Source: Macrostomum lignano
Lineage: Eukaryota
Assembly (NCBI GenBank): GCA_002269645.1
Contig: NIVC01001970.1
Coordinates: 1 to 64,000 of the forward strand
Length of the DNA: 64,000 nt
Direction of reading: 5' to 3'
The notes under the pieces were generated by a model. That model searched no databases and was not told where the DNA came from. It worked only from the letters and a program-made list of their open reading frames with translations. Shown here one piece after another: positions 4,312 to 37,577 of the stretch. Each line of letters starts with the position of its first letter. The stretch's first letter is position 1. A program made the position numbers and the translations under genes.

Positions 4312-7300
4312 TTAATCGAAAGGAGTCACGAAAATTTTCTCTTCAATAAGAAGACCAGTTCCACAGACTTCTTGAAAAACTTGAGCCGACGCATCGGCAA
4401 ATTTTGCGAAAGTCGAAATAAACCCAGTCGATGTCGAAACCTCAAAACAAACGGACGTAGAATCAATCGGCTGGTTGCACTGAACACCAACGCTTGAAGA
4501 AATAGGAGTAACCAAAAGTTCACTCTGAACAAAATGACGTTCAAGAAAGCTGACACACTCTCTAACTTCTAGCTCTTCTTTGTAGCGCATTGTCGAGTCC
4601 GATGTCTGCAGCATCTCACAGAAGCCCATGCCGTCTATTTCTTGTTTCGCTCGAACGGAGCCGACCATGACCGAAGTCTCGAGGAAGGATGCGCACTCTC
4701 TTACTTCAAGCTCTTCCTTGTAGCGTACCGACCCGACTGATGTCTGCAGCATCTCACAGACCCATGTCCTCCACATCCTGTTTCGCTCGAACGGAGCCGA
4801 CCATGAAGGATGTCTCAAGGAACGAAGCGCATTCTCTCACTTCTAGCTCTTCTTTGTAGCGCATTGTCGAGTCGATGTCTGCAGCATCTCACAGACGCCC
4901 ATGTCCTCCACATCTGTTTCGCTCGAACGGAGCCGACCATGACCGAAGTCTCGAGGAAGGATGCGCACTCTCTTACTTCAAGCTCTTCTTTGTAGCGTAC
5001 CGACCCGACTGATGTCTGCAGCATCTCACAGACGCCCATGTCCTCCACATCCTGTTTCGCTCGAACGGAGCCGACCATGAAGGATGTCTCAAGGAACGAA
5101 GCGCATTCTCTCACTTCTAGCTCTTCTTTGTAGCGCATTGTCGAGTCCGATGTCTGCAGCATCTCACAGACGCCCATGTCCTACATCTGTTTCGCTCGAA
5201 CGGAGCCGACCATGACCGAAGTCTCGAGGAAGGATGCGCACTCTCTTACTTCAAGCTCTTCTTGTAGCGTACCGACCCGACTGATGTCTGCAGCATCTCA
5301 CAGACGCCCATGTCCTCCACATCCTGTTTCGCTCGAACGGAGCCGACCATGACGAAGTCTCGAGGAAGGATGCGCACTCTCTTACTTCAAGCTCTTCCTT
5401 GTAGCGTACCGACCCGACTGATGTCTGCAGCATCTCACAGACGCCCATGTCCTCCACATCCTGTTTCGCTCGAACGGAGCCGACCATGAAGGATGTCTCA
5501 AGGAACGAAGCGCATTCTCTCACTTCTAGCTCTTCTTGTAGCGCATTGTCGAGTCCGATGTCTGCAGCATCTCACAGACGCCCATGTCCTCCACATCCTG
5601 TTTCGCTCGAACGGAGCCGACCATGAGGAAGTCTCGAGGAAGGAGCGCACTCTCTTACTTCAAGCTCTTCTTTGTAGCGCGTCGACCCGACTGATGTCTG
5701 CAGCATCTCACAGACGCCCATGTCCTCCACATCCTGTTTCGCTCGAACGGAGCCGACCATGAAGGATGTCTCAAGGAACGAGCGCATTCTCTCACTTCAA
5801 GCTCTTCTTTGTAGCGCATTGTCGAGTCCGATGTCTGCAGCATCTCACAGACGCCCATGTCCTCCACATCCTGTTTCGCTCGAACGGAGCCGACCATGAC
5901 CGAAGTCTCGAGGAAGGATGCGCACTCTCTTACTTCAAGCTCTTCCTTGTAGCGTACCGACCCGACTGATGTCTGCAGCATCTCACAGACGCCCATGTCC
6001 TCCACATCCTGTTTCGCTCGAACGGAGCCGACCATGAAGGAGTCTCAAGGAAGGATGCGCACTCTCACTTCAAGCTCTTCCTTGTAGCGTCGACCGTGAT
6101 GTCTGCAGCATCTCACAGACGCCCATGTCCTCCACATCCTGTTTCGCTCGAACGGAGCCGACCATGACCGAAGTCTCGAGGAAGGATGCGCATTCTCTCT
6201 TACTTCAAGCTCTTCCTTGTAGCGTCGACCCGACTGATGTCTGCAGCATCTCACAGACGCCCATGTCCTCCACATCCTGTTTCGCTCGAACGGAGCCGAC
6301 CATGAAGGAGTCTCAAGGAACGATGCGCACTCTCTCACTTCTAGCTCTTCTTTGTAGCGCGTCGAGTCCGATGTCTGCAGCATCTCACAGACGCCCATGT
6401 CCTCCACATCCTGTTTCGCTCGAACGGAGCCGACCATGAAGAAGTCTCAAGGAAGGATGCGCACTCTCTTACTTCAAGCTCTTCCTTGTAGCGTCGACCG
6501 ACTGATGTCTGCAGCATCTCACAGACGCCCATGTCCTCCACATCCTGTTTCGCTCGAACGGAGCCGACCATGAAGGATGTCTCGAGGAACGAAGCGCACT
6601 CTCTCACTTCAAGCTCTTCTTGTAGCGCGTCGAGTGATGTCTGCAGCATCTCACAGACGCCCATGTCCTCACATCTGTTTCGCTCGAACGGAGCCGACCA
6701 TGACCGAAGTCTCGAGGAAGGATGCGCACTCTCTTACTTCAAGCTCTTCCTTGTAGCGTACCGACCCGACTGATGTCTGCAGCATCTCACAGACGCCCAT
6801 GTCCTCCACATCCTGTTTCGCTCGAACGGAGCCGACCATGACCGAAGTCTCGAGGAAGGATGCGCACTCTCTTACTTCAAGCTCTTCTTGTAGCGTACCG
6901 ACCCGACTGATGTCTGCAGCATCTCACAGACGCCCATGTCCTCCACATCCTGTTTCGCTCGAACGGAGCCGACCATGAAGGATGTCTCAAGGAACGAAGC
7001 GCATTCTCTCACTTCTAGCTCTTCTTGTAGCGCATTGTCGAGTCCGATGTCTGCAGCATCTCACAGACGCCCATGTCCTCCACATCCTGTTTCGCTCGAA
7101 CGGAGCCGACCATGAAGGAGTCTCAAGGAACGAAGCGCATTCTCTCACTTCTAGCTCTTCTTTGTAGCGCATTGTCGAGTCCGATGTCTGCAGCATCTCA
7201 CAGACGCCCATGTCCTCCACATCCTGTTTCGCTCGAACGGAGCCGACCATGACCGAAGTCTCGAGGAAGGATGCGCACTCTCTTACTTCAAGCTCTTCCT

Positions 7301-10300
7301 TGTAGCGTACCGACCGACTGATGTCTGCAGCATCTCACAGACGCCCATGTCCTCCACATCCTGTTTCGCTCGAACGGAGCCGACCATGACCGAAGTCTCG
7401 AGGAAGGATGCGCACTCTCTTACTTCAAGCTCTTCCTTGTAGCGTACCGACCCGACTGATGTCTGCAGCATCTCACAGACGCCCATGTCCTCCACATCCT
7501 GTTTCGCTCGAACGGAGCCGACCATGAAGGATGTCTCGAGGAACGAGCGCATTCTCTCACTTCAAGCTCTTCTTGTAGCGTCGAGTCCGATGTCTGCAGC
7601 ATCTCACAGACGCCCATGTCCTCCACATCCTGTTTCGCTCGAACGGAGCCGACCATGACCGAAGTCTCGAGGAAGGATGCGCACTCTCTTACTTCAAGCT
7701 CTTCCTTGTAGCGTACCGACCCGACTGATGTCTGCAGCATCTCACAGACGCCCATGTCCTCCACATCCTGTTTCGCTCGAACGGAGCCGACCATGAAGGA
7801 TGTCTCAAGGAACGAAGCGCATTCTCTCACTTCTAGCTCTTCTTTGTAGCGCATTGTCGAGTCCGATGTCTGCAGCATCTCACAGACGCCCATGTCCTCC
7901 ACATCCTGTTTCGCTCGAACGGAGCCGACCATGACCGAAGTCTCGAGGAAGGATGCGCACTCTCTTACTTCAAGCTCTTCCTTGTAGCGTACCGACCCGA
8001 CTGATGTCTGCAGCATCTCACAGACGCCCATGTCCTCCACATCCTGTTTCGCTCGAACGGAGCCGACCATGAAGGATGTCTCAAGGAACGAAGCGCATTC
8101 TCTCACTTCAAGCTCTTCTTGTAGCGCATTGTCGAGTCCGATGTCTGCAGCATCTCACAGACGCCCATGTCCTCCACATCCTGTTTCGCTCGAACGGAGC
8201 CGACCATGACCGAAGTCTCGAGGAAGGATGCGCACTCTCTTACTTCAAGCTCTTCCTTGTAGCGTACCGACCCGACTGATGTCTGCAGCATCTCACAGAC
8301 GCCCATGTCCTCCACATCCTGTTTCGCTCGAACGGAGCCGACCATGAAGGATGTCTCAAGGAACGAAGCGCATTCTCTCACTTCTAGCTCTTCTTGTAGC
8401 GCATTGTCGAGTCCGATGTCTGCAGCATCTCACAGACGCCCATGTCCTCCACATCCTGTTTCGCTCGAACGGAGCCGACCATGAGGAAGTCTCGAGGAAG
8501 GATGCGCACTCTCTTACTTCAAGCTCTTCCTTGTAGCGTACCGACCCGACTGATGTCTGCAGCATCTCACAGACGCCCATGTCCTCCACATCCTGTTTCG
8601 CTCGAACGGAGCCGACCATGACCGAAGTCTCGAGGAAGGATGCGCACTCTCTTACTTCAAGCTCTTCTTGTAGCGTACCGACCCGACTGATGTCTGCAGC
8701 ATCTCACAGACGCCCATGTCCTCCACATCCTGTTTCGCTCGAACGGAGCCGACCATGAGGATGTCTCAAGGAACGAAGCGCATTCTCTCACTTCTAGCTC
8801 TTCTTGTAGCGCATTGTCGAGTCCGATGTCTGCAGCATCTCACAGACGCCCATGTCCTCCACATCCTGTTTCGCTCGAACGGAGCCGACCATGGAAGTCT
8901 CGAGGAAGGATGCGCACTCTCTTACTTCAAGCTCTTCCTTGTAGCGTACCGACCGACTGATGTCTGCAGCATCTCACAGACGCCCATGTCCTCCACATCC
9001 TGTTTCGCTCGAACGGAGCCGACCATGAAGGATGTCTCAAGGAACGAGCGCATTCTCTCACTTCTAGCTCTTCTTTGTAGCGCATTGTCGAGTCGATGTC
9101 TGCAGCATCTCACAGACGCCCATGTCCTCCACATCCTGTTTCGCTCGAACGGAGCCGACCATGACCGAAGTCTCGAGGAAGGATGCGCACTCTCTTACTT
9201 CAAGCTCTTCCTTGTAGCGTACCGACCCGACTGATGTCTGCAGCATCTCACAGACGCCCATGTCCTCCACATCCTGTTTCGCTCGAACGGAGCCGACCAT
9301 GAAGGATGTCTCAAGGAACGAAGCGCATTCTCTCACTTCTAGCTCTTCTTGTAGCGCATTGTCGAGTCCGATGTCTGCAGCATCTCACAGACGCCCATGT
9401 CCTCACATCCTGTTTCGCTCGAACGGAGCCGACCATGACCGAAGTCTCGAGGAAGGATGCGCACTCTCTTACTTCAAGCTCTTCCTTGTAGCGTACCGAC
9501 CCGACTGATGTCTGCAGCATCTCACAGACGCCCATGTCCTCCACATCCTGTTTCGCTCGAACGGAGCCGACCATGACCGAAGTCTCGAGGAAGGATGCGC
9601 ACTCTCTTACTTCAAGCTCTTCCTTGTAGCGTACCGACCCGACTGATGTCTGCAGCATCTCACAGACGCCCATGTCCTCCACATCCTGTTTCGCTCGAAC
9701 GGAGCCGACCATGAAGGATGTCTCAAGGAACGAAGCGCATTCTCTCACTTCTAGCTCTTCTTTGTAGCGCATTGTCGAGTCCGATGTCTGCAGCATCTCA
9801 CAGACGCCCATGTCCTCCACATCCTGTTTCGCTCGAACGGAGCCGACCATGACCGAAGTCTCGAGGAAGGATGCGCACTCTCTTACTTCAAGCTCTTCCT
9901 TGTAGCGTACCGACCCGACTGATGTCTGCAGCATCTCACAGACGCCCATGTCCTCCACATCCTGTTTCGCTCGAACGGAGCCGACCATGAAGGATGTCTC
10001 AAGGAACGAAGCGCATTCTCTCACTTCTAGCTCTTCTTTGTAGCGCATTGTCGAGTCCGATGTCTGCAGCATCTCACAGACGCCCATGTCCTCCACATCC
10101 TGTTTCGCTCGAACGGAGCCGACCATGACCGAAGTCTCGAGGAAGGATGCGCACTCTCTTACTTCAAGCTCTTCCTTGTAGCGTACCGACCGACTGATGT
10201 CTGCAGCATCTCACAGACGCCCATGTCCTCCACATCCTGTTTCGCTCGAACGGAGCCGACCATGAAGGATGTCTCAAGGAACGAAGCGCATTCTCTCACT

Positions 10301-13300
10301 TCCAGCTCTTCTTTGTAGCGCATTGTCGAGTCCGATGTCTGCAGCATCTCACAGACGCCCATGTCCTCCACATCCTGTTTCGCTCGAACGGAGCCGACCA
10401 TGACCGAAGTCTCGAGGAAGGATGCGCACTCTCTTACTTCAAGCTCTTCCTTGTAGCGTACCGACCCGACTGATGTCTGCAGCATCTCACAGACGCCCAT
10501 GTCCTCCACATCCTGTTTCGCTCGAACGGAGCCGACCATGACCGAAGTCTCGAGGAAGGATGCGCACTCTCTTACTTCAAGCTCTTCCTTGTAGCGTACC
10601 GACCCGACTGATGTCTGCAGCATCTCACAGACGCCCATGTCCTCCACATCCTGTTTCGCTCGAACGGAGCCGACCATGAAGGATGTCTCAAGGAACGAAG
10701 CGCATTCTCTCACTTCTAGCTCTTCTTTGTAGCGCATTGTCGAGTCCGATGTCTGCAGCATCTCACAGACGCCCATGTCCTCCACATCCTGTTTCGCTCG
10801 AACGGAGCCGACCATGACCGAAGTCTCGAGGAAGGATGCGCACTCTCTTACTTCAAGCTCTTCCTTGTAGCGTACCGACCCGACTGATGTCTGCAGCATC
10901 TCACAGACGCCCATGTCCTCCACATCCTGTTTCGCTCGAACGGAGCCGACCATGAAGGATGTCTCAAGGAACGAAGCGCATTCTCTCACTTCTAGCTCTT
11001 CTTTGTAGCGCATTGTCGAGTCCGATGTCTGCAGCATCTCACAGACGCCCATGCCTCTACATCCTGTTTCGCTCGAACGGAGCCGACCATGACCGAAGTC
11101 TCGAGGAAGGATGCGCACTCTCTTACTTCAAGCTCTTCCTTGTAGCGTACCGACCCGACTGATGTCTGCAGCATCTCACAGACGCCCATGTCCTCCACAT
11201 CCTGTTTCGCTCGAACGGAGCCGACCATGAAGGATGTCTCAAGGAACGAAGCGCATTCTCTACTTCTAGCTCTTCTTTGTAGCGCATTGTCGAGTCCGAT
11301 GTCTGCAGCATCTCACAGACGCCCATGCCTCACATCCTGTTTCGCTCGAACGGAGCCGACCATGACCGAAGTCTCGAGGAAGGATGCGCACTCTCTTACT
11401 TCAAGCTCTTCTTGTAGCGTACCGACCCGACTGATGTCTGCAGCATCTCACAGACGCCCATGTCCTCCACATCCTGTTTCGCTCGAACGGAGCCGACCAT
11501 GACCGAAGTCTCGAGGAAGGATGCGCACTCTCTTACTTCAAGCTCTTCCTTGTAGCGTACCGACCCGACTGATGTCTGCAGCATCTCACAGACGCCCATG
11601 TCCTCCACATCCTGTTTCGCTCGAACGGAGCCGACCATGAAGGATGTCTCAAGGAACGAAGCGCATTCTCTCACTTCTAGCTCTTCTTTGTAGCGCATTG
11701 TCGAGTCCGATGTCTGCAGCATCTCACAGACGCCCATGTCCTCCACATCCTGTTTCGCTCGAACGGAGCCGACCATGACCGAAGTCTCGAGGAAGGATGC
11801 GCACTCTCTTACTTCAAGCTCTTCCTTGTAGCGTACCGACCCGACTGATGTCTGCAGCATCTCACAGACGCCCATGTCCTCCACATCCTGTTTCGCTCGA
11901 ACGGAGCCGACCATGAAGGATGTCTCAAGGAACGAAGCGCATTCTCTCACTTCTAGCTCTTCTTTGTAGCGCATTGTCGAGTCCGATGTCTGCAGCATCT
12001 CACAGACGCCCATGTCCTCCACATCCTGTTTCGCTCGAACGGAGCCGACCATGACCGAAGTCTCGAGGAAGGATGCGCACTCTCTTACTTCAAGCTCTTC
12101 CTTGTAGCGTACCGACCCGACTGATGTCTGCAGCATCTCACAGACGCCCATGTCCTCCACATCCTGTTTCGCTCGAACGGAGCCGACCATGAAGGATGTC
12201 TCAAGGAACGAAGCGCATTCTCTCACTTCTAGCTCTTCTTTGTAGCGCATTGTCGAGTCCGATGTCTGCAGCATCTCACAGACGCCCATGTCCTCCACAT
12301 CCTGTTTCGCTCGAACGGAGCCGACCATGACCGAAGTCTCGAGGAAGGATGCGCACTCTCTTACTTCAAGCTCTTCCTTGTAGCGTACCGACCCGACTGA
12401 TGTCTGCAGCATCTCACAGACGCCCATGTCCTCCACATCCTGTTTCGCTCGAACGGAGCCGACCATGACCGAAGTCTCGAGGAAGGATGCGCACTCTCTT
12501 ACTTCAAGCTCTTCTTGTAGCGTACCGACCCGACTGATGTCTGCAGCATCTCACAGACGCCCATGTCCTCCACATCCTGTTTCGCTCGAACGGAGCCGAC
12601 CATGAAGGATGTCTCAAGGAACGAAGCGCATTCTCTCACTTCTAGCTCTTCTTTGTAGCGCATTGTCGAGTCCGATGTCTGCAGCATCTCACAGACGCCC
12701 ATGTCCTCCACATCCTGTTTCGCTCGAACGGAGCCGACCATGACCGAAGTCTCGAGGAAGATGCGCACTCTCTTACTTCAAGCTCTTCCTTGTAGCGTAC
12801 CGACCCGACTGATGTCTGCAGCATCTCACAGACGCCCATGTCCTCCACATCCTGTTTCGCTCGAACGGAGCCGACCATGAAGGATGTCTCAAGGAACGAA
12901 GCGCATTCTCTCACTTCTAGCTCTTCTTTGTAGCGCATTGTCGAGTCCGATGTCTGCAGCATCTCACAGACGCCCATGCCTCCACATCTGTTTCGCTCGA
13001 ACGGAGCCGACCATGACCGAAGTCTCGAGGAAGGATGCGCACTCTCTTACTTCAAGCTCTTCCTTGTAGCGTACCGACCCGACTGATGTCTGCAGCATCT
13101 CACAGACGCCCATGTCCTCCACATCCTGTTTCGCTCGAACGGAGCCGACCATGAAGGATGTCTCAAGGAACGAAGCGCATTCTCTCACTTCTAGCTCTTC
13201 TTTGTAGCGCATTGTCGAGTCCGATGTCTGCAGCATCTCACAGACGCCCATGCCTCTACATCTGTTTCGCTCGAACGGAGCCGACCATGACCGAAGTCTC

Positions 13301-16300
13301 GAGGAAGGATGCGCACTCTCTTACTTCAAGCTCTTCCTTGTAGCGTACCGACCCGACTGATGTCTGCAGCATCTCACAGACGCCCATGTCCTCCACATCC
13401 TGTTTCGCTCGAACGGAGCCGACCATGAAGGATGTCTCAAGGAACGAAGCGCATTCTCTCACTTCTAGCTCTTCTTTGTAGCGCATTGTCGAGTCCGATG
13501 TCTGCAGCATCTCACAGACGCCCATGCCTCTACATCTGTTTCGCTCGAACGGAGCCGACCATGACCGAAGTCTCGAGGAAGGATGCGCACTCTCTTACTT
13601 CAAGCTCTTCCTTGTAGCGTACCGACCCGACTGATGTCTGCAGCATCTCACAGACGCCCATGTCCTCCACATCCTGTTTCGCTCGAACGGAGCCGACCAT
13701 GAAGGATGTCTCAAGGAACGAAGCGCATTCTCTTACTTCTAGCTCTTCTTTGTAGCGCATTGTCGAGTCCGATGTCTGCAGCATCTCACAGACGCCCATG
13801 CCTCCACATCCTGTTTCGCTCGAACGGAGCCGACCATGACGAAGTCTCGAGGAAGGATGCGCACTCTCTTACTTCAAGCTCTTCCTTGTAGCGTACCGAC
13901 CCGACTGATGTCTGCAGCATCTCACAGACGCCCATGTCCTCCACATCCTGTTTCGCTCGAACGGAGCCGACCATGAAGGATGTCTCAAGGAACGAAGCGC
14001 ATTCTCTCACTTCTAGCTCTTCTTTGTAGCGCATTGTCGAGTCCGATGTCTGCAGCATCTCACAGACGCCCATGTCCTCCACATCCTGTTTCGCTCGAAC
14101 GGAGCCGACCATGACCGAAGTCTCGAGGAAGGATGCGCACTCTCTTACTTCAAGCTCTTCCTTGTAGCGTACCGACCCGACTGATGTCTGCAGCATCTCA
14201 CAGACGCCCATGTCCTCCACATCCTGTTTCGCTCGAACGGAGCCGACCATGACCGAAGTCTCGAGGAAGGATGCGCACTCTCTTACTTCAAGCTCTTCCT
14301 TGTAGCGTACCGACCCGACTGATGTCTGCAGCATCTCACAGACGCCCATGTCCTCCACATCCTGTTTCGCTCGAACGGAGCCGACCATGACCGAAGTCTC
14401 GAGGAAGGATGCGCACTCTCTTACTTCAAGCTCTTCCTTGTAGCGTACCGACCCGACTGATGTCTGCAGCATCTCACAGACGCCCATGTCCTCCACATCC
14501 TGTTTCGCTCGAACGGAGCCGACCATGAAGGATGTCTCAAGGAACGAAGCGCATTCTCTCACTTCTAGCTCTTCTTTGTAGCGCATTGTCGAGTCCGATG
14601 TCTGCAGCATCTCACAGACGCCCATGCCTCTACATCTGTTTCGCTCGAACGGAGCCGACCATGACCGAAGTCTCGAGGAAGGATGCGCACTCTCTTACTT
14701 CAAGCTCTTCCTTGTAGCGTACCGACCCGACTGATGTCTGCAGCATCTCACAGACGCCCATGTCCTCCACATCCTGTTTCGCTCGAACGGAGCCGACCAT
14801 GAAGGATGTCTCAAGGAACGAAGCGCATTCTCTCACTTCTAGCTCTTCTTTGTAGCGCATTGTCGAGTCCGATGTCTGCAGCATCTCACAGACGCCCATG
14901 CCGTCTACTTCTTGTTTCGCTCGAACGGAGCCGACCATGACCGAAGTCTCGAGGAAGGATGCGCACTCTCTTACTTCAAGCTCTTCCTTGTAGCGTACCG
15001 ACCCGACTGATGTCTGCAGCATCTCACAGACGCCCATGTCCTCCACATCCTGTTTCGCTCGAACGGAGCCGACCATGAAGGATGTCTCAAGGAACGAAGC
15101 GCATTCTCTCACTTCTAGCTCTTCTTTGTAGCGCATTGTCGAGTCCGATGTCTGCAGCATCTCACAGACGCCCATGCCGTCTACATCTGTTTCGCTCGAA
15201 CGGAGCCGACCATGACCGAAGTCTCGAGGAAGGATGCGCACTCTCTTACTTCAAGCTCTTCCTTGTAGCGTACCGACCCGACTGATGTCTGCAGCATCTC
15301 ACAGACGCCCATGTCCTCCACATCCTGTTTCGCTCGAACGGAGCCGACCATGACCGAAGTCTCGAGGAAGGATGCGCACTCTCTTACTTCAAGCTCTTCT
15401 TGTAGCGTACCGACCGACTGATGTCTGCAGCATCTCACAGACGCCCATGTCCTCCACATCCTGTTTCGCTCGAACGGAGCCGACCATGAAGGATGTCTCA
15501 AGGAACGAAGCGCATTCTCTCACTTCTAGCTCTTCTTTGTAGCGCATTGTCGAGTCCGATGTCTGCAGCATCTCACAGACGCCCATGCCTCTACTTCTGT
15601 TTCGCTCGAACGGAGCCGACCATGACCGAAGTCTCGAGGAAGGATGCGCACTCTCTTACTTCAAGCTCTTCCTTGTAGCGTACCGACCCGACTGATGTCT
15701 GCAGCATCTCACAGACGCCCATGCCGTCCTACTTCTGTTTCGCTCGAACGGAGCCGACCATGACCGAAGTCTCGAGGAAGGATGCGCACTCTCTTACTTC
15801 AAGCTCTTCTTGTAGCGTACCGACCGACTGATGTCTGCAGCATCTCACAGACGCCCATGTCCTCCACATCCTGTTTCGCTCGAACGGAGCCGACCATGAA
15901 GGATGTCTCAAGGAACGAAGCGCACTCTCTTACTTCTAGCTCTTCTTTGTAGCGCATTGTCGAGTCCGATGTCTGCAGCATCTCACAGACGCCCATGTCC
16001 TCCACATCCTGTTTCGCTCGAACGGAGCCGACCATGAAGGATGTCTCAAGGAACGAAGCGCATTCTCTCACTTCTAGCTCTTCTTTGTAGCGCATTGTCG
16101 AGTCCGATGTCTGCAGCATCTCACAGACGCCCATGCCGTCTACTTCTGTTTCGCTCGAACGGAGCCGACCATGACCGAAGTCTCGAGGAAGGATGCGCAC
16201 TCTCTTACTTCAAGCTCTTCCTTGTAGCGTACCGACCCGACTGATGTCTGCAGCATCTCACAGACGCCCATGTCCTCCACATCCTGTTTCGCTCGAACGG

Positions 16301-19300
16301 AGCCGACCATGAAGGATGTCTCAAGGAACGAAGCGCATTCTCTCACTTCTAGCTCTTCTTTGTAGCGCATTGTCGAGTCCGATGTCTGCAGCATCTCACA
16401 GACGCCCATGCCTCTACATCTGTTTCGCTCGAACGGAGCCGACCATGACCGAAGTCTCGAGGAAGGATGCGCACTCTCTTACTTCAAGCTCTTCCTTGTA
16501 GCGTACCGACCCGACTGATGTCTGCAGCATCTCACAGACGCCCATGTCCTCCACATCCTGTTTCGCTCGAACGGAGCCGACCATGAAGGATGTCTCAAGG
16601 AACGAAGCGCATTCTCTCACTTCTAGCTCTTCTTTGTAGCGCATTGTCGAGTCCGATGTCTGCAGCATCTCACAGACGCCCATGCCGTCACTTCTGTTTC
16701 GCTCGAACGGAGCCGACCATGACGAAGTCTCGAGGAAGGATGCGCACTCTCTTACTTCAAGCTCTTCCTTGTAGCGTACCGACCCGACTGATGTCTGCAG
16801 CATCTCACAGACACCCATGTCCTCCACATCCTGTTTCGCTCGAACGGAGCCGACCATGAAGGATGTCTCAAGGAACGAAGCGCATTCTCTCACTTCTAGC
16901 TCTTCTTTGTAGCGCATTGTCGAGTCCGATGTCTGCAGCATCTCACAGACGCCCATGTCCTCCACATCCTGTTTCGCTCGAACGGAGCCGACCATGACCG
17001 AAGTCTCGAGGAAGGATGCGCACTCTCTTACTTCAAGCTCTTCCTTGTAGCGTACCGACCCGACTGATGTCTGCAGCATCTCACAGACGCCCATGTCCTC
17101 CACATCCTGTTTCGCTCGAACGGAGCCGACCATGAAGGATGTCTCAAGGAACGAAGCGCACTCTCTTACTTCTAGCTCTTCTTTGTAGCGCATTGTCGAG
17201 TCCGATGTCTGCAGCATCTCACAGACGCCCATGTCCTCCACATCCTGTTTCGCTCGAACGGAGCCGACCATGACCGAAGTCTCGAGGAAGGATGCGCACT
17301 CTCTTACTTCAAGCTCTTCCTTGTAGCGTACCGACCCGACTGATGTCTGCAGCATCTCACAGACGCCCATGTCCTCCACATCCTGTTTCGCTCGAACGGA
17401 GCCGACCATGACCGAAGTCTCGAGGAAGGATGCGCACTCTCTTACTTCAAGCTCTTCCTTGTAGCGTACCGACCCGACTGATGTCTGCAGCATCTCACAG
17501 ACGCCCATGTCCTCCACATCCTGTTTCGCTCGAACGGAGCCGACCATGAAGGATGTCTCAAGGAACGAAGCGCATTCTCTCACTTCTAGCTCTTCTTTGT
17601 AGCGCATTGTCGAGTCCGATGTCTGCAGCATCTCACAGAAGCCCATGCCGTCTACTTCTTGTTTCGCTCGAACGGAGCCGACCATGACCGAAGTCTCGAG
17701 GAAGGATGCGCACTCTCTTACTTCAAGCTCTTCCTTGTAGCGTACCGACTTGACTGATGTCTGCAGCATCTCACAGACGCCCATGTCCTCCACATCCTGT
17801 TTCGCTCGAACGGAGCCGACCATGAAGGATGTCTCAAGGAACGAAGCGCATTCTCTCACTTCTAGCTCTTCTTTGTAGCGCATTGTCGAGTCCGATGTCT
17901 GCAGCATCTCACAGAAGCCCATGCCGTCTACTTCTTGTTTCGCTCGAACGGAGCCGACCATGATCGAAGTCTCGAGGAAGGATGCGCACTCTCTTACTTC
18001 AAGCTCTTCCTTGTAGCGTACCGACCCGACTGATGTCTGCAGCATCTCACAGACGCCCATGTCCTCCACATCCTGTTTCGCTCGAACGGAGCCGACCATG
18101 AAGGATGTCTCAAGGAACGAAGCGCATTCTCTCACTTCTAGCTCTTCTTTGTAGCGCATTGTCGAGTCCGATGTCTGCAGCATCTCACAGAAGCCCATGC
18201 CGTCTACTTCTTGTTTCGCTCGAACGGAGCCGACCATGACCGAAGTCTCGAGGAAGGATGCGCACTCTCTTACTTCAAGCTCTTCCTTGTAGCGTACCGA
18301 CCCGACTGATGTCTGCAGCATCTCACAGACGCCCATGTCCTCCACATCCTGTTTCGCTCGAACGGAGCCGACCATGAAGGATGTCTCAAGGAACGAAGCG
18401 CATTCTCTCACTTCTAGCTCTTCTTTGTAGCGCATTGTCGAGTCCGATGTCTGCAGCATCTCACAGAAGCCCATGCCGTCTACTTCTTGTTTCGCTCGAA
18501 CGGAGCCGACCATGACCGAAGTCTCGAGGAAGGATGCGCACTCTCTTACTTCAAGCTCTTCCTTGTAGCGTACCGACCCGACTGATGTCTGCAGCATCTC
18601 ACAGACGCCCATGTCCTCCACATCCTGTTTCGCTCGAACGGAGCCGACCATGAAGGATGTCTCAAGGAACGAAGCGCATTCTCTCACTTCTAGCTCTTCT
18701 TTGTAGCGCATTGTCGAGTCCGATGTCTGCAGCATCTCACAGAAGCCCATGCCGTCTACTTCTTGTTTCGCTCGAACGGAGCCGACCATGACCGAAGTCT
18801 CGAGGAAGGATGCGCACTCTCTTACTTCAAGCTCTTCCTTGTAGCGTACCGACTTGACTGATGTCTGCAGCATCTCACAGACGCCCATGTCCTCCACATC
18901 CTGTTTCGCTCGAACGGAGCCGACCATGAAGGATGTCTCAAGGAACGAAGCGCATTCTCTCACTTCTAGCTCTTCTTTGTAGCGCATTGTCGAGTCCGAT
19001 GTCTGCAGCATCTCACAGAAGCCCATGCCGTCTACTTCTTGTTTCGCTCGAACGGAGCCGACCATGATCGAAGTCTCGAGGAAGGATGCGCACTCTCTTA
19101 CTTCAAGCTCTTCCTTGTAGCGTACCGACCCGACTGATGTCTGCAGCATCTCACAGACGCCCATGTCCTCCACATCCTGTTTCGCTCGAACGGAGCCGAC
19201 CATGAAGGATGTCTCAAGGAACGAAGCGCATTCTCTCACTTCTAGCTCTTCTTTGTAGCGCATTGTCGTGTCTGATGTCTCCAACATCTCACAGAAGCCC

Positions 19301-25300: not shown

Positions 25301-28300
25301 TCGTTGAGTTTCGGCTCCTCCTTGTAGCGTATGGACCCGTCTGATGTGAGCAGCATCTCACAGACGCCCATGTCGTCTATTTCTTGTTTCACTCGAACAG
25401 ATCCCATCATGACGGATGTCTCGAGGAACGATGCGCAGTCTCTCACTTCTAGCTCTTCTTTGTAGCGCATTGTCGTGTCTGATGTCTCCAACATCTCACA
25501 GAAGCCCATGTCGTTCACACTCTGGCTTACTCGAATGGACTCACTCAAGACAGTCGTTTCCAGGAATGAGGCGCATTCGTTGAGCTTCGGCTCTTCCTTG
25601 TAGCGTACCGACCCGTCTAATGTGGGCAGCATCTCACAGACGCCCATTTCATCGACTGGCTGTTCCACTTGAACTGAAGCCTCCTTCACAAGTGTCTCTA
25701 CTCTGATAGCGCCTTCCAGGAATGTGGTCTCGGAGAATGTGAAGCACTCGTTGAGTTTCGGCTCTTCCTTGTAGCGTACTGACCCGTCTGATTTGAGCAG
25801 CATCTCACAGACGCCCATTCCATCGACTGGCTGTTCCACTTGAACTGAAGCCTCCTTCACAAGTGTCTCTACTCGGATAGCGCCTTCCAGGAATGTGGTC
25901 TCGGAGAATGTGAAGCACTCGTTGAGTTTCGGCTCCTCCTTGTAGCGTATGGACCCGTCTGATGTGAGCAGCATCTCACAGACGCCCATGTCGTCTATTT
26001 CTTGTTTCACTCGAACAGATCCCATCATGACGGATGTCTCGAGGAACGATGCGCAGTCTCTCACTTCTAGCTCTTCTTTGTAGCGCATTGTCGTGTCTGA
26101 TGTCTCCAACATCTCACAGAAGCCCATGTCGTTCACACTCTGGCTTACTCGAATGGACTCACTCAAGACAGTCGTTTCCAGGAATGAGGCGCATTCGTTG
26201 AGCTTCGGCTCTTCCTTGTAGCGTACCGACCCGTCTAATGTGGGCAGCATCTCACAGACGCCCATTTCATCGACTGGCTGTTCCACTTGAACTGAAGCCT
26301 CCTTCACAAGTGTCTCTACTCTGATAGCGCCTTCCAGGAATGTGGTCTCGGAGAATGTGAAGCACTCGTTGAGTTTCGGCTCTTCCTTGTAGCGTACCGA
26401 CCCGTCTGATGTGAGCAGCATCTCACAGACGCCCATTCCATCGACTGGCTGTTCCACTTGAACTGAAGCCTCCTTCACAAGTGTCTCTACTCTGATAGCG
26501 CCTTCCAGGAATGTGGTCTCGGAGAATGTGAAGCACTCGTTTAGTTTCGGCTCTTGCTTGTAACGTACCGACCCGTCTGATGTGAGCAGCGTCTCAGAAA
26601 CGCCCATCTCATCCACGGTTGGCTCTGCTCGCACACCAGTCGTTTTGTGTATAAGCTCAAGCGAGCTGGCGCACTCTTCGACCTGCGGTTCGTCCTTGAA
26701 TCTTACGTTTTCGCTCGCGCTTAGTACCTCGTTGTATACGCCAATCTCTCCGACTTCTTGATTGACTTGCACAGAAGCTTCTTGGACTTTAGTTTTCGTA
26801 CGAACGAAGCCTGACTTGACCAACAACTCAAGCGAGCTGGCGCACTCTTCGACCTTCGGTTCATCCTTGAATCTCATGGCACCATGAGAGAACATAAATT
26901 GCTCACAGACGCCCATCTCATCTACGGTCGGCTGTGCTCGTACACCAGCATTTTCGTGCATAAATTCAAGCGAGCTGTTGCACTGTAGAATTTTCGGCAT
27001 GTTACTGAATTTTACGTTGCTGTTAACTGCTTTGATTTTTTCCACTTCTTCAGCAAATCCCAGTTCGCTGACGACTTGTTTGGCTGTTACAGAAACGTCT
27101 TTCGTTGTCATCTGTGCTTTGGTGTTGCTTTCCTTATAAGATTTTTCTAAGTGGGAGAAACACTCTCGAATTTTTGTCTCCTCTTTGCATAAAACAGACG
27201 CATCTTCGGTTGAAATTTCCATTTCAACGCTCATGCACGCAAGTTTTGGGCTTACGGAGATGCTGCTTTCGCCTGTGAAAGAATCTGTTTGAAGTGCGGC
27301 TTCACTAAAGTGGTTCTCATAGTGCACTTCGCAAGTGCTGAGTTTTTCCTGAGTTTTTTCTTCAGTTTTGCAATTTACACTGCTATCCGCAAATTCCAGG
27401 TCAAATGAACACTCAAAATCTGAAATTTGGTTTTCGATTACGCAGTTGACTCCCTGTTCGGCAGTGACTAGCTCCTGAGACAGGTGCATATATTTTATTT
27501 GTTGCTTAACAACTAAAACCGATTCCTCTGTTTCACAGGTCGTTTTTACGCAGGCATCTTGAACTTCTACTTTTCTCGGTGGTTGAGTTGCCATGAGCTT
27601 TTTACGGTTTGTCTCCTCTTCGATTTTTATCTCGATGTCGATGTCTACGCTTTGTCTTCCGAATCTCTCATCCACCTGTTCAGCAACATAAAGGGAGTCT
27701 GTGTCAGTTTGCCTAACCCGGCTTTCGTACTTAATGAGTTTCTCTTCCGTCTCTACTGTTTGGCCAGACTGATCTGTTTGAGTCTCTGAGTCGCTGCTTT
27801 CTATTTCTAGACAGAACAGATCATTCTGCACAGTATAGTGCAGGTGGCAGGCAATCTTGCTCTCCGCCATCACGCTCTGCTTATCGCAACCTGTGCTGGC
27901 TATTGGTATCTGCGCAGTTTGACAGCCAGCCTCGCGCGTGACTGCTTGGGTTTTTCCAACAGCAGCACCGGTGCCGGAGCCTGAGCTTGAAGTCGCATTC
28001 GCTTCGCTTTCATTGGAGCTCGAAATTGCCGTTGCAAGCTTTCGCGTTTCCGAGTACTCTAACTTTTCTTTGACGTCAACTCTCAGCTGGGATCGGCCCT
28101 CAGATGCCGATGCAGCAGCGTACGCGGACTGAGAGTGCACTATCGGACTCGGAATATTTTCGTGCAGGTAGCGTTTTACTTCGGACTCGTACTCTTGAAT
28201 GTAGTTGTACACAGCCTGACGAAATACTGGATCCTCAATATCCTGAGTAGAGTTCTGTCGATATTCCGAATAACCCGCCTGCACAGATTTCGAAGTGGGA

Positions 28301-28602
28301 GACAGGAGCCCCACCGGACTCCTTGGGGGCGGTTTGGTCTGCGTGCTCTCGCTCATTGACGCACGTCTGAGCTGCTGGCGGACCTGATCCTTGGCGACTG
28401 TCAGATCCCGGATGCTGGTTAGGTCGACTGGCCTGGACTTGAGAAGGGGATACCACTCAGACTCGCGACTGTCGCGAAGGCTGCCTCTTCTACCTTCGAA
28501 TAGAAGATCGGTGGTGTCCATTCTCTGCGAGTTCGTTACCGATTGACCGTCTGTCTGCGAGCTCCCGGTGACTTGCACTGCTAGTGACTGGCTTTCACGC
28601 TG
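4312..28602 (-). CDS. Giant terminal exon (~24.3 kb, ~8,100 aa) of a plakin-family gene: unique TQT/VQV-motif region, then 57/46-aa higher-order repeats, then 46-aa A/B array, then short C-terminus ending KIFVTPFD*
   Basis: Acceptor CTACAG|CAGCGT at 28603/28602, phase 0, matching the upstream exon. Open for >4,000 codons (ORF 16414-28674). Beyond that the same peptide continues through many single-base frameshifts to the unique tail and stop at 4312-4314. Confidence 0.8.
4560..19270 (-). repeat. Coding tandem array of 138-bp (46-aa) units, mostly alternating A (SDSTM...TSF) and B (SVGSV...TSV) as a 276-bp dimer, ~105 units
   Basis: Period 138 bp (e.g. cccatgtcc at 9531 and 9669). B unit MGVCEMLQTSVGSVRYKEELEVRECASFLETSVMVGSVRAKQDVED. 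Copy number estimated from length. Confidence 0.95.
19200..26600 (-). repeat. Coding higher-order repeat block: nine HORs of (171 bp)n + 138 + 138 bp, n=2-5, 29 copies of the 57-aa unit
   Basis: Marker AATGTGGGC (MLPTLDG unit) at ~19413, 20201, 21161, 22121, 22911, 23700, 24489, 25620 and 26237. Spacings of ~789, 960, 960, 789, 789, 789, 1131 and 618 equal n x 171 + 276. Confidence 0.9.
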
Positions 28603-28687
28603 CTGTAGATCAATGGGTAGGTAATAAAAACAGTTTTTGATGTGCAAAACTGATCCAAATTTAACTTGAGTCAAATTTTCTGCTTAC

Positions 28688-28811
28688 TTGGACGCTTTGA
28701 TTAACTGTTGTTGATTTTCTGACCTCTGTCAAACGAGTTGAGTAGAGACTCCAATCCTGCATCCGGGTCTGCAGATCTTCCATTTGTTTGCCACTTTCTT
28801 CCTGCATTTTC
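28688..28811 (-). CDS. Plakin gene exon 8 (KMQEESGKQMEDLQTRMQDWSLYSTRLTEVRKSTTVNQSVQ)
   Basis: Acceptor TTTTGCAG|G (phase 2), donor CAA|GTAAGC (phase 0). An 85-nt intron leads to the giant exon. Helical, spectrin-like peptide. Confidence 0.8.
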
Positions 28812-29585: not shown

Positions 29586-29769
29586 TGTAGGACAGAAATG
29601 GCGGTCATCATCTGAGCCGACTCTTCCGTTAGCCCGCTGTGGTCGCGCTTGAAAAATTCCAACTGCTCGTTGAGGCATTTCCAGTTTCGCATGTGCTCAA
29701 GCAGCTTCTCAAGCAAAGATCGAAGCAGAACGGCGTCGCTCGAGCGAACCGTCGAACTCTGGTCCGGCG
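29586..29769 (-). CDS. Plakin gene exon 7 (PDQSSTVRSSDAVLLRSLLEKLLEHMRNWKCLNEQLEFFKRDHSGLTEESAQMMTAISVLQ)
   Basis: Acceptor TTCATCATTGCAG|CG (phase 1), donor CA|GTGAGT (phase 2). Both phases match the neighbouring exons. Confidence 0.75.
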
Positions 29770-30801: not shown

Positions 30802-30952
30802 AACTGAGCACGAGTCGGTCTCGAACGGCTTGAACCGCTTCAACCAGCTGACTGCGCTGCTGGCCCTCGTCTCCCAGTAGGCCGTCACTGAGGGCTTCCT
30901 CCAGCTGGGTGAGAAAGTTCAGGAATGTCAGCTGAGCTGATGGCTCCGCAGT
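30802..30952 (-). CDS. Plakin gene exon 6 (TAEPSAQLTFLNFLTQLEEALSDGLLGDEGQQRSQLVEAVQAVRDRLVLS)
   Basis: Acceptor CCTTATAG|ACT (phase 0), donor T|GTGAGT (phase 1). GC-rich amphipathic-helix-like coding stretch. Confidence 0.75.
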
Positions 30953-31053: not shown

Positions 31054-31165
31054 CACGGTGTCATTGCTGAGCAGCTTCTGCAAATAGTCGGAGTAGAACT
31101 GCGTCAGCCACTGCTGAACTTCGGTTAGCAGACTTGCCCACGTGTTGCGCAGCTTGCGTCGAATT
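31054..31165 (-). CDS. Plakin gene exon 5 (IRRKLRNTWASLLTEVQQWLTQFYSDYLQKLLSNDTV)
   Basis: Acceptor CTTTTCTAG|A (phase 2), donor GTG|GTGAGC (phase 0). Corresponds to the post-SH3 helix with conserved Trp in plakin domains. Confidence 0.8.
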
Positions 31166-32391: not shown

Positions 32392-32395
32392 CAAC

Positions 32396-34784: not shown

Positions 34785-34939
34785 ACGACAGCCACTTCAA
34801 CAGCCTCAGTGTCTGGCGGCGGCAGCCAGATGCAGATGCTGGGCACCTCCATCACTGTTCCATCGGCCTTGGCCACCTTCCAGTTGAATGAGTTTGAGTT
34901 GTCCAGTACTGTCACCTCCTCGGAGTTGTTCAGAGTGTT
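34785..34939 (-). CDS. Plakin gene exon 4: SH3 domain of the plakin domain (NTLNNSEEVTVLDNSNSFNWKVAKADGTVMEVPSICIWLPPPDTEAVEVAV)
   Basis: Matches the plakin SH3 signature L.DNS....WKV....G....VPS.C..(L/V)PPP..EA of plectin/BPAG1/desmoplakin. Acceptor TCTCTCCCACCAG|AAC (phase 0), donor GT|GTGAGT (phase 2). Confidence 0.9.
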
Positions 34940-34957
34940 CTGGTGGGAGAGAATAGA

Positions 34958-35172: not shown

Positions 35173-35194
35173 AGTGAACATCGGAACATGCATA

Positions 35195-35722
35195 TCCCAC
35201 TGCAGACCCACATTGCAGACCCCACACTGCAGACCTCACACTGCAGACGTCACACTGCAGACCCAAGATTGCAGACCCCACACTGCAGACCCACATTGCA
35301 GACCCCACACTGCAGACCTCACACTGCAGACGTCACACTGCAGACCCAAGATTGCAGACCCCACACTGCAGACCCACATTGCAGACCCCACACTGCAGAC
35401 GTCACACTGCAGACCCAAGATTGCAGACCCCACACTGCAGACCCCACATTGCAGACCTCAACTGCAGACCCCAACTGCAGACCTCACACTGCAGACGTCA
35501 CACTGCAGACCCAAGATTGCAGACCCCACACTGCAGACCCACACTGCAGACCCACATTGCAGACCCAACACTGCAGACGTCACACTGCAGACCCAAGATT
35601 GCAGACCCCACACTGCAGACCCACATTGCAGACCCCACACTGCAGACCCCCCACTGCAGACGTCACACTGCAGACCCAAGATTGCAGACCCCACACTGCA
35701 GACCCCACACTGCAGACCCCAG
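35195..35722. repeat. Variable 13-15-bp minisatellite built on CTGCAGACC(C)CACA
   Basis: Dense [C/T]TGCAGAC cores with several spacer variants forming a loose higher-order pattern; abuts the previous array. Confidence 0.9.
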
Positions 35723-35742
35723 ATACGCATAAGCAAGCAAAC

Positions 35743-35889
35743 CTCTCCATCGTCGAAACGGAAAATATTTCTGGCCGGATAGCCAACATCCACTGGCTGG
35801 CAGCGGCGGTACAGCGGCACCACGCTGTGACTCTTCGACATCAGCTGGTCGGTGCGCTGTGACAGCAGCAGCAGCTGTGAGTAGTTTTC
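35743..35889 (-). CDS. Plakin gene exon 3 (ENYSQLLLLSQRTDQLMSKSHSVVPLYRRCQPVDVGYPARNIFRFDDGE)
   Basis: Resembles the plakin pre-SH3 segment (L..+AK.++.L.PR...P..P++A+CDY). Acceptor TTTTCTACAG|GAA, donor GAG|GTTTGC, both phase 0. Confidence 0.8.
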
Positions 35890-36493: not shown

Positions 36494-36718
36494 ACTCAAG
36501 ACCGTGTTCATTCGCTGCATAGAGCTCAGCTGTCCTGTTGGCGGAATCGAACCAACGACTTGAGCGTTAGCCAGATTTCGCGAGTTGATCACCTCTTCAA
36601 GCTCGTTGGCTTCGTGATAGAACCATTGATAATCTGCCGAATTCTTCAGGTGCAGCTGGGTCAGCTCGCCGAGTCGAGTCACCCATTCCCAGGTCTGCGA
36701 CACCTCGTTGCTGAGTTG
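36494..36718 (-). CDS. Plakin gene exon 2 (QLSNEVSQTWEWVTRLGELTQLHLKNSADYQWFYHEANELEE...MNTVLS)
   Basis: Matches the plakin motif Q..W.W+..L......HLK....Y..F+.+A. Acceptor AACTTCAG|CAA, donor AGT|GTGAGT, both phase 0. Confidence 0.85.
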
Positions 36719-37172: not shown

Positions 37173-37577
37173 CTTTTTCTCCAATAGTTCCGTGTTGTCA
37201 CGCTGGGACAGAGCGATGGCCTGGCCTTCCACTTGGCGGCAGCACTCGGCTAGGTTGCTTTCAAGGCTGGAGATCTGTCTCAGGTAGGCGATAGCGTCCT
37301 TGTTGATTGACACTTGGCCGCGAGCCTGCTGCAGCTGCTGCGCGCAGGACGAATCTTCCAGAAGTAGCTTCTGCGCTTCGGACGATGAAGCGATCGCCAG
37401 CTGCTCTTCTAGGCTGGCAATCTTGGCAAGGAGCGACTCCTGCGTTCGGCTCTGGTGCAGCAGGGCTTGCTGGCTGCAGCCCAGTCGCGGCGAGGCGATC
37501 ACGTCAGCGTTGGCCGTCAGCCAGGCTTGCGCCGCCTCGATTACATCGGGGTTGTCTGGCGTCTCCAGCGAAGCCAT
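37173..37577 (-). CDS. Plakin gene first identifiable coding exon (MASLETPDNPDVIEAAQAWLTAN...ELLEKK), spectrin-repeat-like
   Basis: Open GC-rich frame, ATG in context AAACGATGG, donor AAG|GTGCGA (phase 0). A pyrimidine-rich acceptor CGCTTTTCCAG| lies 13 nt upstream (37591/37590). The start codon is inferred. Confidence 0.7.

What the first reader, a model, noticed from the sequence alone, without database searches (positions are those of the whole stretch)
4312..37577. Giant (~8,600 aa) plakin whose tail is a ~24-kb single-exon array of a novel 46-aa repeat
Seen: eight small exons with consensus GT-AG sites chain with matching phases (0,0,0,2,0,1,2,0) into the giant exon, and they carry the plakin SH3/spectrin signatures. 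Known: plakins normally follow the plakin domain with a coiled-coil rod and 38-aa plakin repeats (desmoplakin, plectin, VAB-10A) or with spectrin repeats, EF-hand and GAS2 (Shot, MACF1). Inference: here that C-terminal half is replaced by ~8,100 aa of an unrelated, hierarchically amplified Glu/Val/Ser/Cys repeat. I do not recognise this architecture; it could be a lineage-specific giant cytolinker or molecular ruler.
Basis: partly seen in the sequence, partly recalled or inferred. Interest (0 to 1): 0.9.

Follow-up and report, generated by a model that had tools for sequence, protein, structure and literature searches.

The report
Flatworm giant plakin-head repeat protein gene
This is a real gene of the flatworm Macrostomum lignano in which a short plakin (desmoplakin-like) head, made from eight small exons, is joined to a roughly 24-kb exon of a repeat found only in this species. 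It is uncharacterised and belongs to a small gene family, but the reading frame is broken in the assembled sequence, most likely by assembly errors.

Summary
On the minus strand, eight small exons with GT-AG sites splice in frame. They encode 501 aa with a Pfam SH3_10 domain above the curated cut-off and sequence matches to the desmoplakin and plectin plakin domains. They join a giant exon (28602-4312) built of 138-nt (46-aa) and 171-nt (57-aa) units arranged in higher-order blocks.

Three corrections apply:
- **Frame.** It is open only from 28602 to 16417 (4,062 codons). The distal 12 kb has about 50 frame changes. Of 139 deletions, 138 sit at sites that differ between unit types, and a paralogous copy is mostly intact, so I read them as consensus errors. 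The ~8,600 aa length is plausible but not shown.
- **Second gene.** A second array (64000-41971) is the tail of a separate upstream gene.
- **Family.** M. lignano has at least three paralogue types (46/57-aa or 24-aa units), all filed only as hypothetical proteins.

An exhaustive profile search of 1.84 billion proteins found the repeat only in M. lignano. Its fold and function are unknown; it is acidic and strand-prone, with two Cys per unit. The best analogy is AHNAK/desmoyokin, which has the same gene layout but no detectable homology. Verdict: a new variant of a known kind, of moderate interest.

The parts
37173..37577 (-). Exon 1 (405 nt, aa 1-135). The start ATG is at 37577-37575.
   Evidence: GT donor. 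An in-frame stop lies upstream and there is no earlier ATG. The N-terminus MAS... is shared with paralogue P0008 and model P0006.
36494..36718 (-). Exon 2 (225 nt)
   Evidence: AG/GT sites and open frame. Colinear with P0006 and P0008.
35743..35889 (-). Exon 3 (147 nt). The SH3_10 domain starts here, at about 35817.
34785..34939 (-). Exon 4 (155 nt). It holds the rest of SH3_10, including the VPSICIWLPPPDTEA motif, which is invariant in all three paralogue types.
   Evidence: Aligns to the desmoplakin and plectin SH3 region.
31054..31165 (-). Exon 5 (112 nt)
   Evidence: tblastn.
30802..30952 (-). Exon 6 (151 nt)
29586..29769 (-). Exon 7 (184 nt)
28688..28811 (-). Exon 8 (124 nt)
   Evidence: Its sequence continues into the giant exon in P0003 and P0006.
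26608..28602 (-). Start of the giant exon: an acidic, Ser-rich linker of about 560 aa that grades into degenerate repeat units. The acceptor is a tandem CAG|CAG (NAGNAG).
   Evidence: No Pfam or PDB match. The motif VYNYIQEYESEVKRYLHENIPSPIV is conserved in paralogue types II and III. P0003 lacks one Q at the junction and P0006 has it.
19366..26607 (-). Higher-order repeat zone: blocks of two to five 171-nt (57-aa) units followed by two 138-nt (46-aa) units. The frame is intact.
   Evidence: Tandem Repeats Finder; unit-length series.
16417..19365 (-). Proximal part of the homogeneous 138-nt array, still in frame. The open frame that begins at 28602 ends with a stop at 16414-16416.
4531..16413 (-). 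Distal part of the 138-nt array, about 88 units, with about 50 frame changes caused by 1-3-nt deletions. Probably coding, with the deletions being consensus errors.
   Evidence: The paralogous copy L004 has 56 of 64 units at exactly 138 nt.
4312..4530 (-). Unique C-terminal tail (about 70 aa, ...LLIEEKIFVTPFD) plus the stop codon. An AATAAA lies at 3985.
   Evidence: NCBI M. lignano proteins P0009 and P0013 carry the same tail. None of three genomic copies has an indel in it.
41971..64000 (-). Neighbouring gene A, outside the finding: a second array of the same unit types that runs off the window end. It finishes with about 230 unique residues, then 13 copies of a 23-aa repeat (42065-42963), then a stop at 41971.
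   Evidence: The tail has no match in the protein database and no copy downstream of array 1.

Best explanation
This is a genuine protein-coding gene of the flatworm Macrostomum lignano. It belongs to a family, seen so far only in this species, whose members join a short plakin-domain head to a giant tandem-repeat tail encoded by one very large exon.

What is shown:
- The exon chain, the plakin SH3 head and the absence of a signal peptide.
- A linker of about 560 aa.
- An array of 46/57-aa units whose peptide sequence has been under purifying selection.
- A short unique C-terminus.

What is inferred:
- The roughly 50 frame breaks in the distal 12 kb are long-read consensus errors made where reads from different unit types were piled together. 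If so, the real product is about 8,000-8,700 aa with about 155 units.
- By analogy with other plakins, the head takes the protein to junctional or membrane-plaque complexes.
- The acidic (pI about 4.3), strand-prone tail, with two Cys per unit, acts as a very long tether, spacer or scaffold beneath the membrane. This is the role proposed for AHNAK/desmoyokin. The tail's partners and fold are unknown.
For: Gene structure:
- GT-AG sites and an open splice chain.
- SH3_10 above the Pfam cut-off.
- Desmoplakin and plectin matches over about 235 residues.
- Near-identical M. lignano models P0003 and P0006 cross the exon 8/giant exon junction.

The repeat is coding:
- A 12.2-kb open frame.
- Unit types A and B differ at pS 0.37 against pN 0.06.
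- The paralogues keep the peptide motif while their DNA and unit length differ.

The frame breaks are artefacts:
- 141 deletion events, 6 insertions and about 82 substitutions across 246 units.
- 138 of 139 deletions touch the 24% of positions that differ between unit types, p about 2e-84.
- 76% lie in short homopolymer runs.
- The breaks are confined to the array interiors.
- Copy L004 in the public assembly has 56 of 64 units intact and ORFs of 1,116 and 1,395 aa. Copy L003, at a contig end, is far more damaged.

Tail and expression:
- The tail ORF is conserved without indels in three copies.
- Transcripts of the same cluster (Mlig000934) are detected and classed 'Non-Specific' in positional RNA-seq (PMC7336406 supplements).
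Against: - As assembled, the frame stops at 16414, and I have no read-level or cDNA data for this locus.
- Array length in any assembly of such a homogeneous repeat is uncertain.
- Two AlphaFold runs gave no confident fold (pLDDT 39 and 34), so 'strand-prone' rests on weak evidence.
- No localisation, interaction or phenotype data exist.
- The expression evidence concerns sister members of the transcript cluster, not this exact gene.
- The head covers only part of a canonical plakin domain, so its targeting function is assumed.
- The C-terminal tail shows mostly non-synonymous differences between copies.
Confidence: 0.72

Rival explanations
1. The frame breaks are real. The protein ends at the stop at 16414 (about 4,563 aa), and the distal 12 kb of array is a decaying, non-coding extension or 3' UTR.
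For: It is the literal reading of the sequence. A few full-length units also carry in-frame stops, and L004 has one in-frame stop.
Against: The deletion:insertion ratio is 23:1, and indels outnumber substitutions. Nearly all deletions fall at sites that differ between unit types. The distal units are otherwise identical to the in-frame ones: only 20 distinct sequences occur among 162 full-length units. The homologous array in L004 is largely intact. The unique tail ORF after the array is preserved in three copies.
Confidence: 0.1
2. The array is a non-coding 138-bp satellite that happens to lie next to a small plakin-like gene. The long ORF is incidental.
For: It is an extremely homogeneous tandem array duplicated within the window. 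M. lignano is repeat-rich.
Against: The array holds 4,062 stop-free codons in one frame only. pN/pS between unit types is about 0.16. The array is continuous in frame with the spliced head. Paralogues have different units but the same peptide motif. Public gene models and RNA-seq counts exist for array fragments.
Confidence: 0.02
3. The tail is a regular beta-solenoid rod related to leucine-rich repeats, with one turn per 23-24 aa. It would be a stiff ruler rather than a flexible tether.
For: The 24-aa units of paralogue type III score 38.1 bits on Pfam LRR_5, against a cut-off of 27.7. The base period is 23-24 aa. Hydrophobic periodicity is about 2.0-2.2, and the low-confidence model is all strands.
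Against: The window's own units give no LRR hit at E<=1. Scores on perfect repeats are inflated by summing weak per-unit matches. AlphaFold confidence is very low. The profile search of 1.84 billion proteins returned no LRR proteins.
Confidence: 0.12
4. The tail is a cross-linkable structural precursor. About 300-350 Cys and many Lys, Gln and Glu would let it be locked into an insoluble cortical layer such as the epidermal cell web, in the way envoplakin and periplakin are built into the cornified envelope.
For: Each unit has two conserved Cys. Cys makes up 3.9% of the repeat. Cluster-mates are expressed body-wide rather than in gonad or tail. The envoplakin/periplakin precedent is described in PMC2132639 and PMC2185584 (listed).
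Against: There is no direct evidence. The cytoplasm is reducing. Half of the type II units lack the second Cys.
Confidence: 0.12

Closest known systems
Plakin family (desmoplakin, plectin, envoplakin, periplakin; spectraplakins Shot/VAB-10/MACF1)
   Same: It has an SH3 domain of the plakin type (Pfam SH3_10) embedded in spectrin-repeat-like sequence. About 235 residues align to the desmoplakin (3R6N) and plectin (3PE0) plakin-domain crystal constructs. It is cytoplasmic and very large.
   Different: The head is only about 500 aa. There are no calponin-homology domains, no plakin repeats, and no spectrin rod, EF-hand or GAS2 domains. There is no 3.5-residue hydrophobic periodicity that would indicate a coiled-coil rod. 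The whole C-terminal part is an unrelated 46/57-aa repeat.
AHNAK (desmoyokin), AHNAK2 and periaxin
   Same: The gene and protein layout is the same: several small exons encode a short N-terminal targeting domain, and one giant exon encodes thousands of residues of tandem repeats plus a unique C-terminus. AHNAK was first found as a desmosomal plaque protein (PMC10682155; PMC2171952).
   Different: No sequence relationship was detected. The head is a plakin SH3/spectrin module, not a PDZ domain. The unit is 46/57 aa (base 23-24 aa) rather than 128 or 165 aa. The tail here is strongly acidic and contains Cys.
Epiplakin
   Same: A plakin-family member whose repeats are encoded by a single large exon and are highly homogenised (own knowledge; see also PMC8782857, listed).
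   Different: Epiplakin consists only of plakin repeat domains and lacks a plakin domain. The protein here is the reverse: it has the plakin-domain head and no plakin repeats.
BspA-type leucine-rich repeats (Pfam LRR_5)
   Same: The repeat period is 23-24 aa, and paralogue type III scores above the curated threshold.
   Different: The window's units do not match. The hit may be a repeat-summing artefact. LRR_5 proteins are mostly bacterial or protist surface proteins.

Membership tests
Plakin family | Plakin-type SH3 domain (SH3_10) inserted in a spectrin repeat | tested here: met
   PF17902 scores 46.6 bits against a cut-off of 22.8, at aa 235-299. The alignment to the desmoplakin and plectin SH3 regions includes the VPS.C..(V/L)PPP motif.
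Plakin family | Flanking spectrin repeats of the plakin domain (SR3-SR9, about 900-1,000 aa in canonical members) | tested here: inconclusive
   The profile of three paralogue heads matches desmoplakin 3R6N over query positions 82-317 (E 1.1e-11) and plectin 3PE0 over 129-297. The head is only 501 aa, so at most about 4 repeats fit. No structure model of the head was made.
Plakin family | C-terminal plakin repeat domains (intermediate-filament binding), or a spectrin rod with EF-hand and GAS2 (spectraplakins) | tested here: not met
   Pfam scans of the head plus linker, all repeat types and the neighbouring gene's tail found none of these families.
Plakin family | Central coiled-coil rod (desmoplakin, plectin, envoplakin, periplakin) | tested here: not met
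   The hydrophobicity spectrum of the repeats peaks at periods of about 2.0-2.2 and 3.0, not 3.5-3.6. The low-confidence model is mostly strands. No dedicated coiled-coil predictor was run.
Spectraplakins | N-terminal calponin-homology actin-binding domain | tested here: not met
   The ORF starts at a conserved MAS... with an in-frame stop upstream. The 4.4 kb upstream holds only minisatellites and the end of another gene.
AHNAK/periaxin family | N-terminal PDZ domain and homologous central repeat units | tested here: not met
   There is no PDZ hit. The repeat profile found only M. lignano proteins among 1.84 billion representatives.
AHNAK/periaxin family | Gene layout: small 5' exons plus one giant repeat exon | tested here: met
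   AHNAK layout as described in PMC10682155. This is a resemblance in layout only.
Leucine-rich repeats, BspA type (LRR_5) | Match to PF13306 above the gathering score | tested here: not met
   The window's 46- and 57-aa units give no LRR hit at E<=1. Only the 24-aa units of paralogue type III score 38.1 bits against 27.7.

The most novel reading that the evidence does not exclude
Macrostomum has a previously undescribed class of giant cortical proteins. A plakin-domain anchor is fused to thousands of residues of an orphan, acidic, Cys-bearing, strand-forming repeat with a base unit of 23-24 aa. The class has diversified into at least three paralogue types and been recombined with at least one non-plakin head. 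These proteins would take over the mechanical linker or cell-web role that desmoplakin- or AHNAK-type proteins play in vertebrates, using a fold not yet seen.
Probability: 0.3. Interest if true: 0.7.

Novelty: new variant of a known kind. Interest (0 to 1): 0.55.

Why it matters
To my knowledge, the only plakin-domain proteins described outside vertebrates are the spectraplakins. A plakin head fused to an orphan 8,000-residue repeat would show that the plakin domain was re-used as a portable anchoring module in flatworms.

It would also add an independent example of the 'small targeting head plus giant single-exon repeat' design known from AHNAK.

M. lignano has working RNAi, in situ hybridisation and transgenesis, so the function is directly testable.

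The locus is also a clear worked example of how consensus errors in homogeneous tandem arrays split one giant gene into many 'hypothetical protein' fragments in public annotation. The fragments here were named AMOTL1, Nesprin-1 and RNase H domain protein by automatic pipelines.

Tried and rejected
- **AlphaFold2 of the repeat.** Five units without an alignment gave pLDDT 39. Four units with a 9-row alignment of natural paralogue segments gave pLDDT 34. Neither model was usable, so no fold search was run.
- **Pfam on the repeats.** Only sub-threshold hits with no accepted stretches.
- **PDB sequence searches.** The repeat profile and the linker found nothing.
- **Word-indexed protein searches.** The head and the repeat returned only M. 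lignano entries. The tail of the neighbouring gene returned nothing.
- **Metagenome scans.** The head and repeat alignments found no relatives.
- **Literature.** No paper combines Macrostomum with plakin terms or with the locus tags.
- **Supplement searches for expression.** Nothing in PMC5816591, PMC5730564 or PMC11398382. Only PMC7336406 held cluster-mates, and its files were cut before the higher-numbered IDs.
- **Exact look-up of P0003.** Not on record.
- **Profile-profile test that the two halves of the 46-aa unit are related.** Weak: P = 0.004, probability 8%. The 23-aa base unit therefore rests mainly on inspection and on the 24-aa units of type III.
- **dN/dS between the window and paralogue L002 in the linker.** Too few differences to be informative: pS 0.015, pN 0.010.
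- **A stylet-, testis- or adhesive-organ-specific role.** Considered and set aside, because cluster-mates are positionally non-specific.
Full report
**Organism and locus.** The spliced head and the start of the giant exon are 97-100% identical to predicted proteins of the free-living flatworm Macrostomum lignano: UniRef A0A1I8H8D0, A0A1I8GZB3 and A0A1I8G870. Genomic copies in the public assembly GCA_002269645.1 are 95-98% identical to the window but not the same sequence (L002, L003, L004). The window is therefore another copy, or another assembly, of a multi-copy locus. That fits the known recent polyploidy of this species (PMC10733133, listed).

**The small exons and the head.**
They chain in frame into the giant exon.
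- The ATG at 37577 follows an in-frame stop with no earlier ATG. The N-terminus MAS... is shared with a 51%-identical paralogue.
- The 501-aa head contains Pfam SH3_10 above its curated cut-off, 46.6 bits against 22.8.
- It matches the crystallised plakin-domain fragments of desmoplakin (3R6N) and plectin (3PE0) over about 235 residues. E-values are 7.7e-10 as a single sequence and 1.1e-11 as a three-paralogue profile.
- There is no signal peptide, no calponin-homology domain and nothing else from the plakin tool-kit.
Model P0003 lacks one Q, which fits the tandem CAG|CAG acceptor at 28602/28599.

**The giant exon.** From 28602 it encodes four parts in order.
- A linker of about 560 aa that is acidic and Ser-rich, with no database match.
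- A zone of higher-order repeats. Two to five 57-aa units alternate with two 46-aa units, in blocks of about 790-960 nt that are 95-98% identical.
- A long homogeneous array of 46-aa units, mainly of two types. Type A is VGSVRAKQDVEDMGVCEMLQTSVGSVRYKEELEVRECASFLETSVM. Type B has DSTM in place of VGSV and F in place of V.
- After one diverged last unit, a unique 70-aa tail and a stop at 4312.

The same tail ends two NCBI M. lignano proteins, P0009 and P0013, and has no indel in three genomic copies.

**Is the repeat coding?** Yes, on three grounds.
- One frame is open for 4,062 codons.
- Unit types A and B differ at 11.5 synonymous and 6.5 non-synonymous positions. That is pS 0.37 against pN 0.06, with a run of third-position changes across an unchanged RYKEELEVRECASFLETS.
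- The paralogues keep the peptide motif while their DNA and unit length differ.

**The frame breaks.** After 16417 the frame changes about 50 times. The second array behaves the same way in its interior. I conclude these are consensus errors, for five reasons.
- Among 246 units of the two arrays there are 141 deletion events, 6 insertions and about 82 substitutions. Natural decay would show the reverse proportions.
- Full-length units are nearly identical within each type. Only 20 distinct sequences occur among 162.
- 138 of 139 deletions touch the 24 positions that differ between the four main unit types. Those positions and their equivalent gap placements cover 24% of the unit, giving p of about 2e-84. 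In addition, 76% of deletions lie in short homopolymer runs, which make up 34% of the unit. This is what a consensus caller produces when reads from different unit types are piled on one another.
- The breaks are absent near the array edges and in the more distinctive higher-order zone.
- In the public assembly, the homologous array of L004 has 56 of 64 units at exactly 138 nt and ORFs of 1,116 and 1,395 aa. The copy at a contig end, L003, is far more damaged.

The 24,288 nt from 28602 to 4315 are a multiple of three, and the first and last segments are in the same frame.

A product of about 8,600 aa with about 155 units is therefore likely but unproven. The literal product is 4,563 aa. The number of units in any assembly of this array should be treated as approximate.

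**What else is in the window.** A second array of the same unit types occupies 64000-43738 on the same strand and runs off the window. It ends in its own C-terminus: about 230 unique, Cys-rich residues, 13 copies of a 23-aa repeat (TRREGTALGSTDSVSSARAQLGV) and a stop at 41971. This tail has no copy downstream of array 1 and no match in the protein database. It is therefore the end of a separate upstream gene A, whose head lies beyond the window. The gene in the finding (gene B) starts 4.4 kb downstream of it.

**The family.** A profile of the repeat was searched exhaustively against 1.84 billion representative proteins. It hit only M. lignano proteins, plus one marginal bacterial sequence at E = 8e-5. 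Two metagenome scans found nothing. The hits define at least three paralogue types, all with the same plakin head and a conserved linker motif (VY.YI.E...EVK.YL....P..IV).
- Type I is the window, with 46/57-aa units.
- Type II is P0014/P0007. Its head is 47-49% identical, and 46- and 57-aa units alternate strictly.
- Type III is P0008/P0012. Its head is 51% identical, and it has long runs of a 24-aa unit, SGCFRETSYNESRVRFKEEIAVTG.

The 24-aa unit aligns by eye with each half of the 46-aa unit, through the pattern C..(x)..TS...(G)S.VR.K.E. The profile-profile test of the two halves is only weakly positive, P = 0.004.

At another locus (L001, P0004) the same repeats follow a non-plakin coiled-coil head, if that gene model is right. 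In L002 the start of the giant exon is duplicated without a head.

All of these are filed as hypothetical proteins or under misleading automatic names. I found no paper that mentions them.

**What the tail might be.**
- The repeat is acidic, pI 4.3. Its composition is Glu 15.5%, Val 11.7%, Ser 9.1% and Cys 3.9%, with almost no Pro in the 46-aa units.
- Its hydrophobicity alternates with periods of about 2.0-2.2 and 3.0, and there is no alpha-helical or heptad signal.
- Both AlphaFold runs gave very low confidence. The run with an alignment drew about four short strands per unit.
- The type III units pass the Pfam LRR_5 threshold, but the window's units do not. I treat this as a lead, not a classification.

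**Expression.** Transcripts of cluster Mlig000934, the cluster that holds the repeat fragment P0005, are present at low counts in all four positional RNA-seq libraries and are classed 'Non-Specific' (PMC7336406 supplements). This points to body-wide somatic expression rather than a gonad- or tail-specific structure. It is indirect, because I did not see those members' sequences.

**Mechanism proposed (inferred).**
- The plakin head docks the protein at junctional or membrane-plaque complexes, as plakin domains do in desmoplakin, plectin and periplakin.
- The giant acidic repeat extends from there as a long tether, spacer or scaffold. It may be stabilised or cross-linked through its roughly 300-350 cysteines.
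- The nearest analogue in design is AHNAK/desmoyokin. It has small 5' exons for a targeting domain, one giant exon of tandem repeats and a unique C-terminus, and it was first isolated from desmosomal plaques (PMC10682155). No homology to it was detected.

**Verdict.** The gene and its unusual architecture are real, and the repeat is an orphan. The claim of a single open 8,600-aa frame needs better sequence. The gene is one member of a small family rather than unique. I rate it a new variant of a known kind, with moderate interest.

Noticed in passing
window 41971-64000 (minus strand): A second giant array of the same 138-nt unit types belongs to a separate upstream gene. It has its own C-terminus: about 230 unique Cys-rich residues and 13 copies of a 23-aa repeat at 42065-42963. 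That tail matches nothing in the 5.8-billion-cluster protein database.
   Followed up: partly
window 28866-29548, 29988-30682, 33170-33505, 34949-35721, 37734-38509, 40831-41026, 41590-41795: The introns of the head and the intergenic spacer are packed with minisatellites of period 13-32 nt, 9-46 copies each and 82-97% identical.
   Followed up: no
window 28599-28604: A tandem CAG|CAG (NAGNAG) acceptor sits at the start of the giant exon. Public models differ by exactly one Gln here: P0006 has QQ and P0003 has Q.
   Followed up: partly
L002 (NIVC01000828.1:38399-60576), positions 5711 and 16580: In a paralogous locus, the start of the giant exon (linker plus first repeats, with about 60 nt of the preceding intron) occurs twice, about 11 kb apart. 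The second copy has no head exons and carries many 1-nt indels.
   Followed up: partly
L001 (NIVC01000392.1:482132-509604), gene model P0004: A more diverged copy of the repeat (about 89% DNA identity) is modelled with a different head: an acidic N-terminus (MSLLDEDFEVIGSDEP...) followed by a short coiled coil, and no plakin domain. The model may be chimeric.
   Followed up: partly
window about 28150-28250 (linker, aa ~630-660 of the protein); also P0008 and P0014: A motif of about 30 aa, VYNYIQEYESEVKRYLHENIPSPIV, is conserved in the otherwise divergent linkers of all three paralogue types. It could be a binding site.
   Followed up: no
P0008/P0012 (paralogue type III, not in the window): The 24-aa units score above the Pfam gathering threshold for BspA-type leucine-rich repeats (LRR_5, 38.1 bits against 27.7). 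The window's 46/57-aa units do not.
   Followed up: partly
window 4531-16413 and 45000-60000: Deletions in the arrays fall almost only at the positions where unit types differ (138 of 139). This is a useful diagnostic signature of consensus errors in tandem repeats. Public annotation splits these genes into many short 'hypothetical proteins', with names such as AMOTL1, Nesprin-1 and RNase H domain protein.
   Followed up: yes
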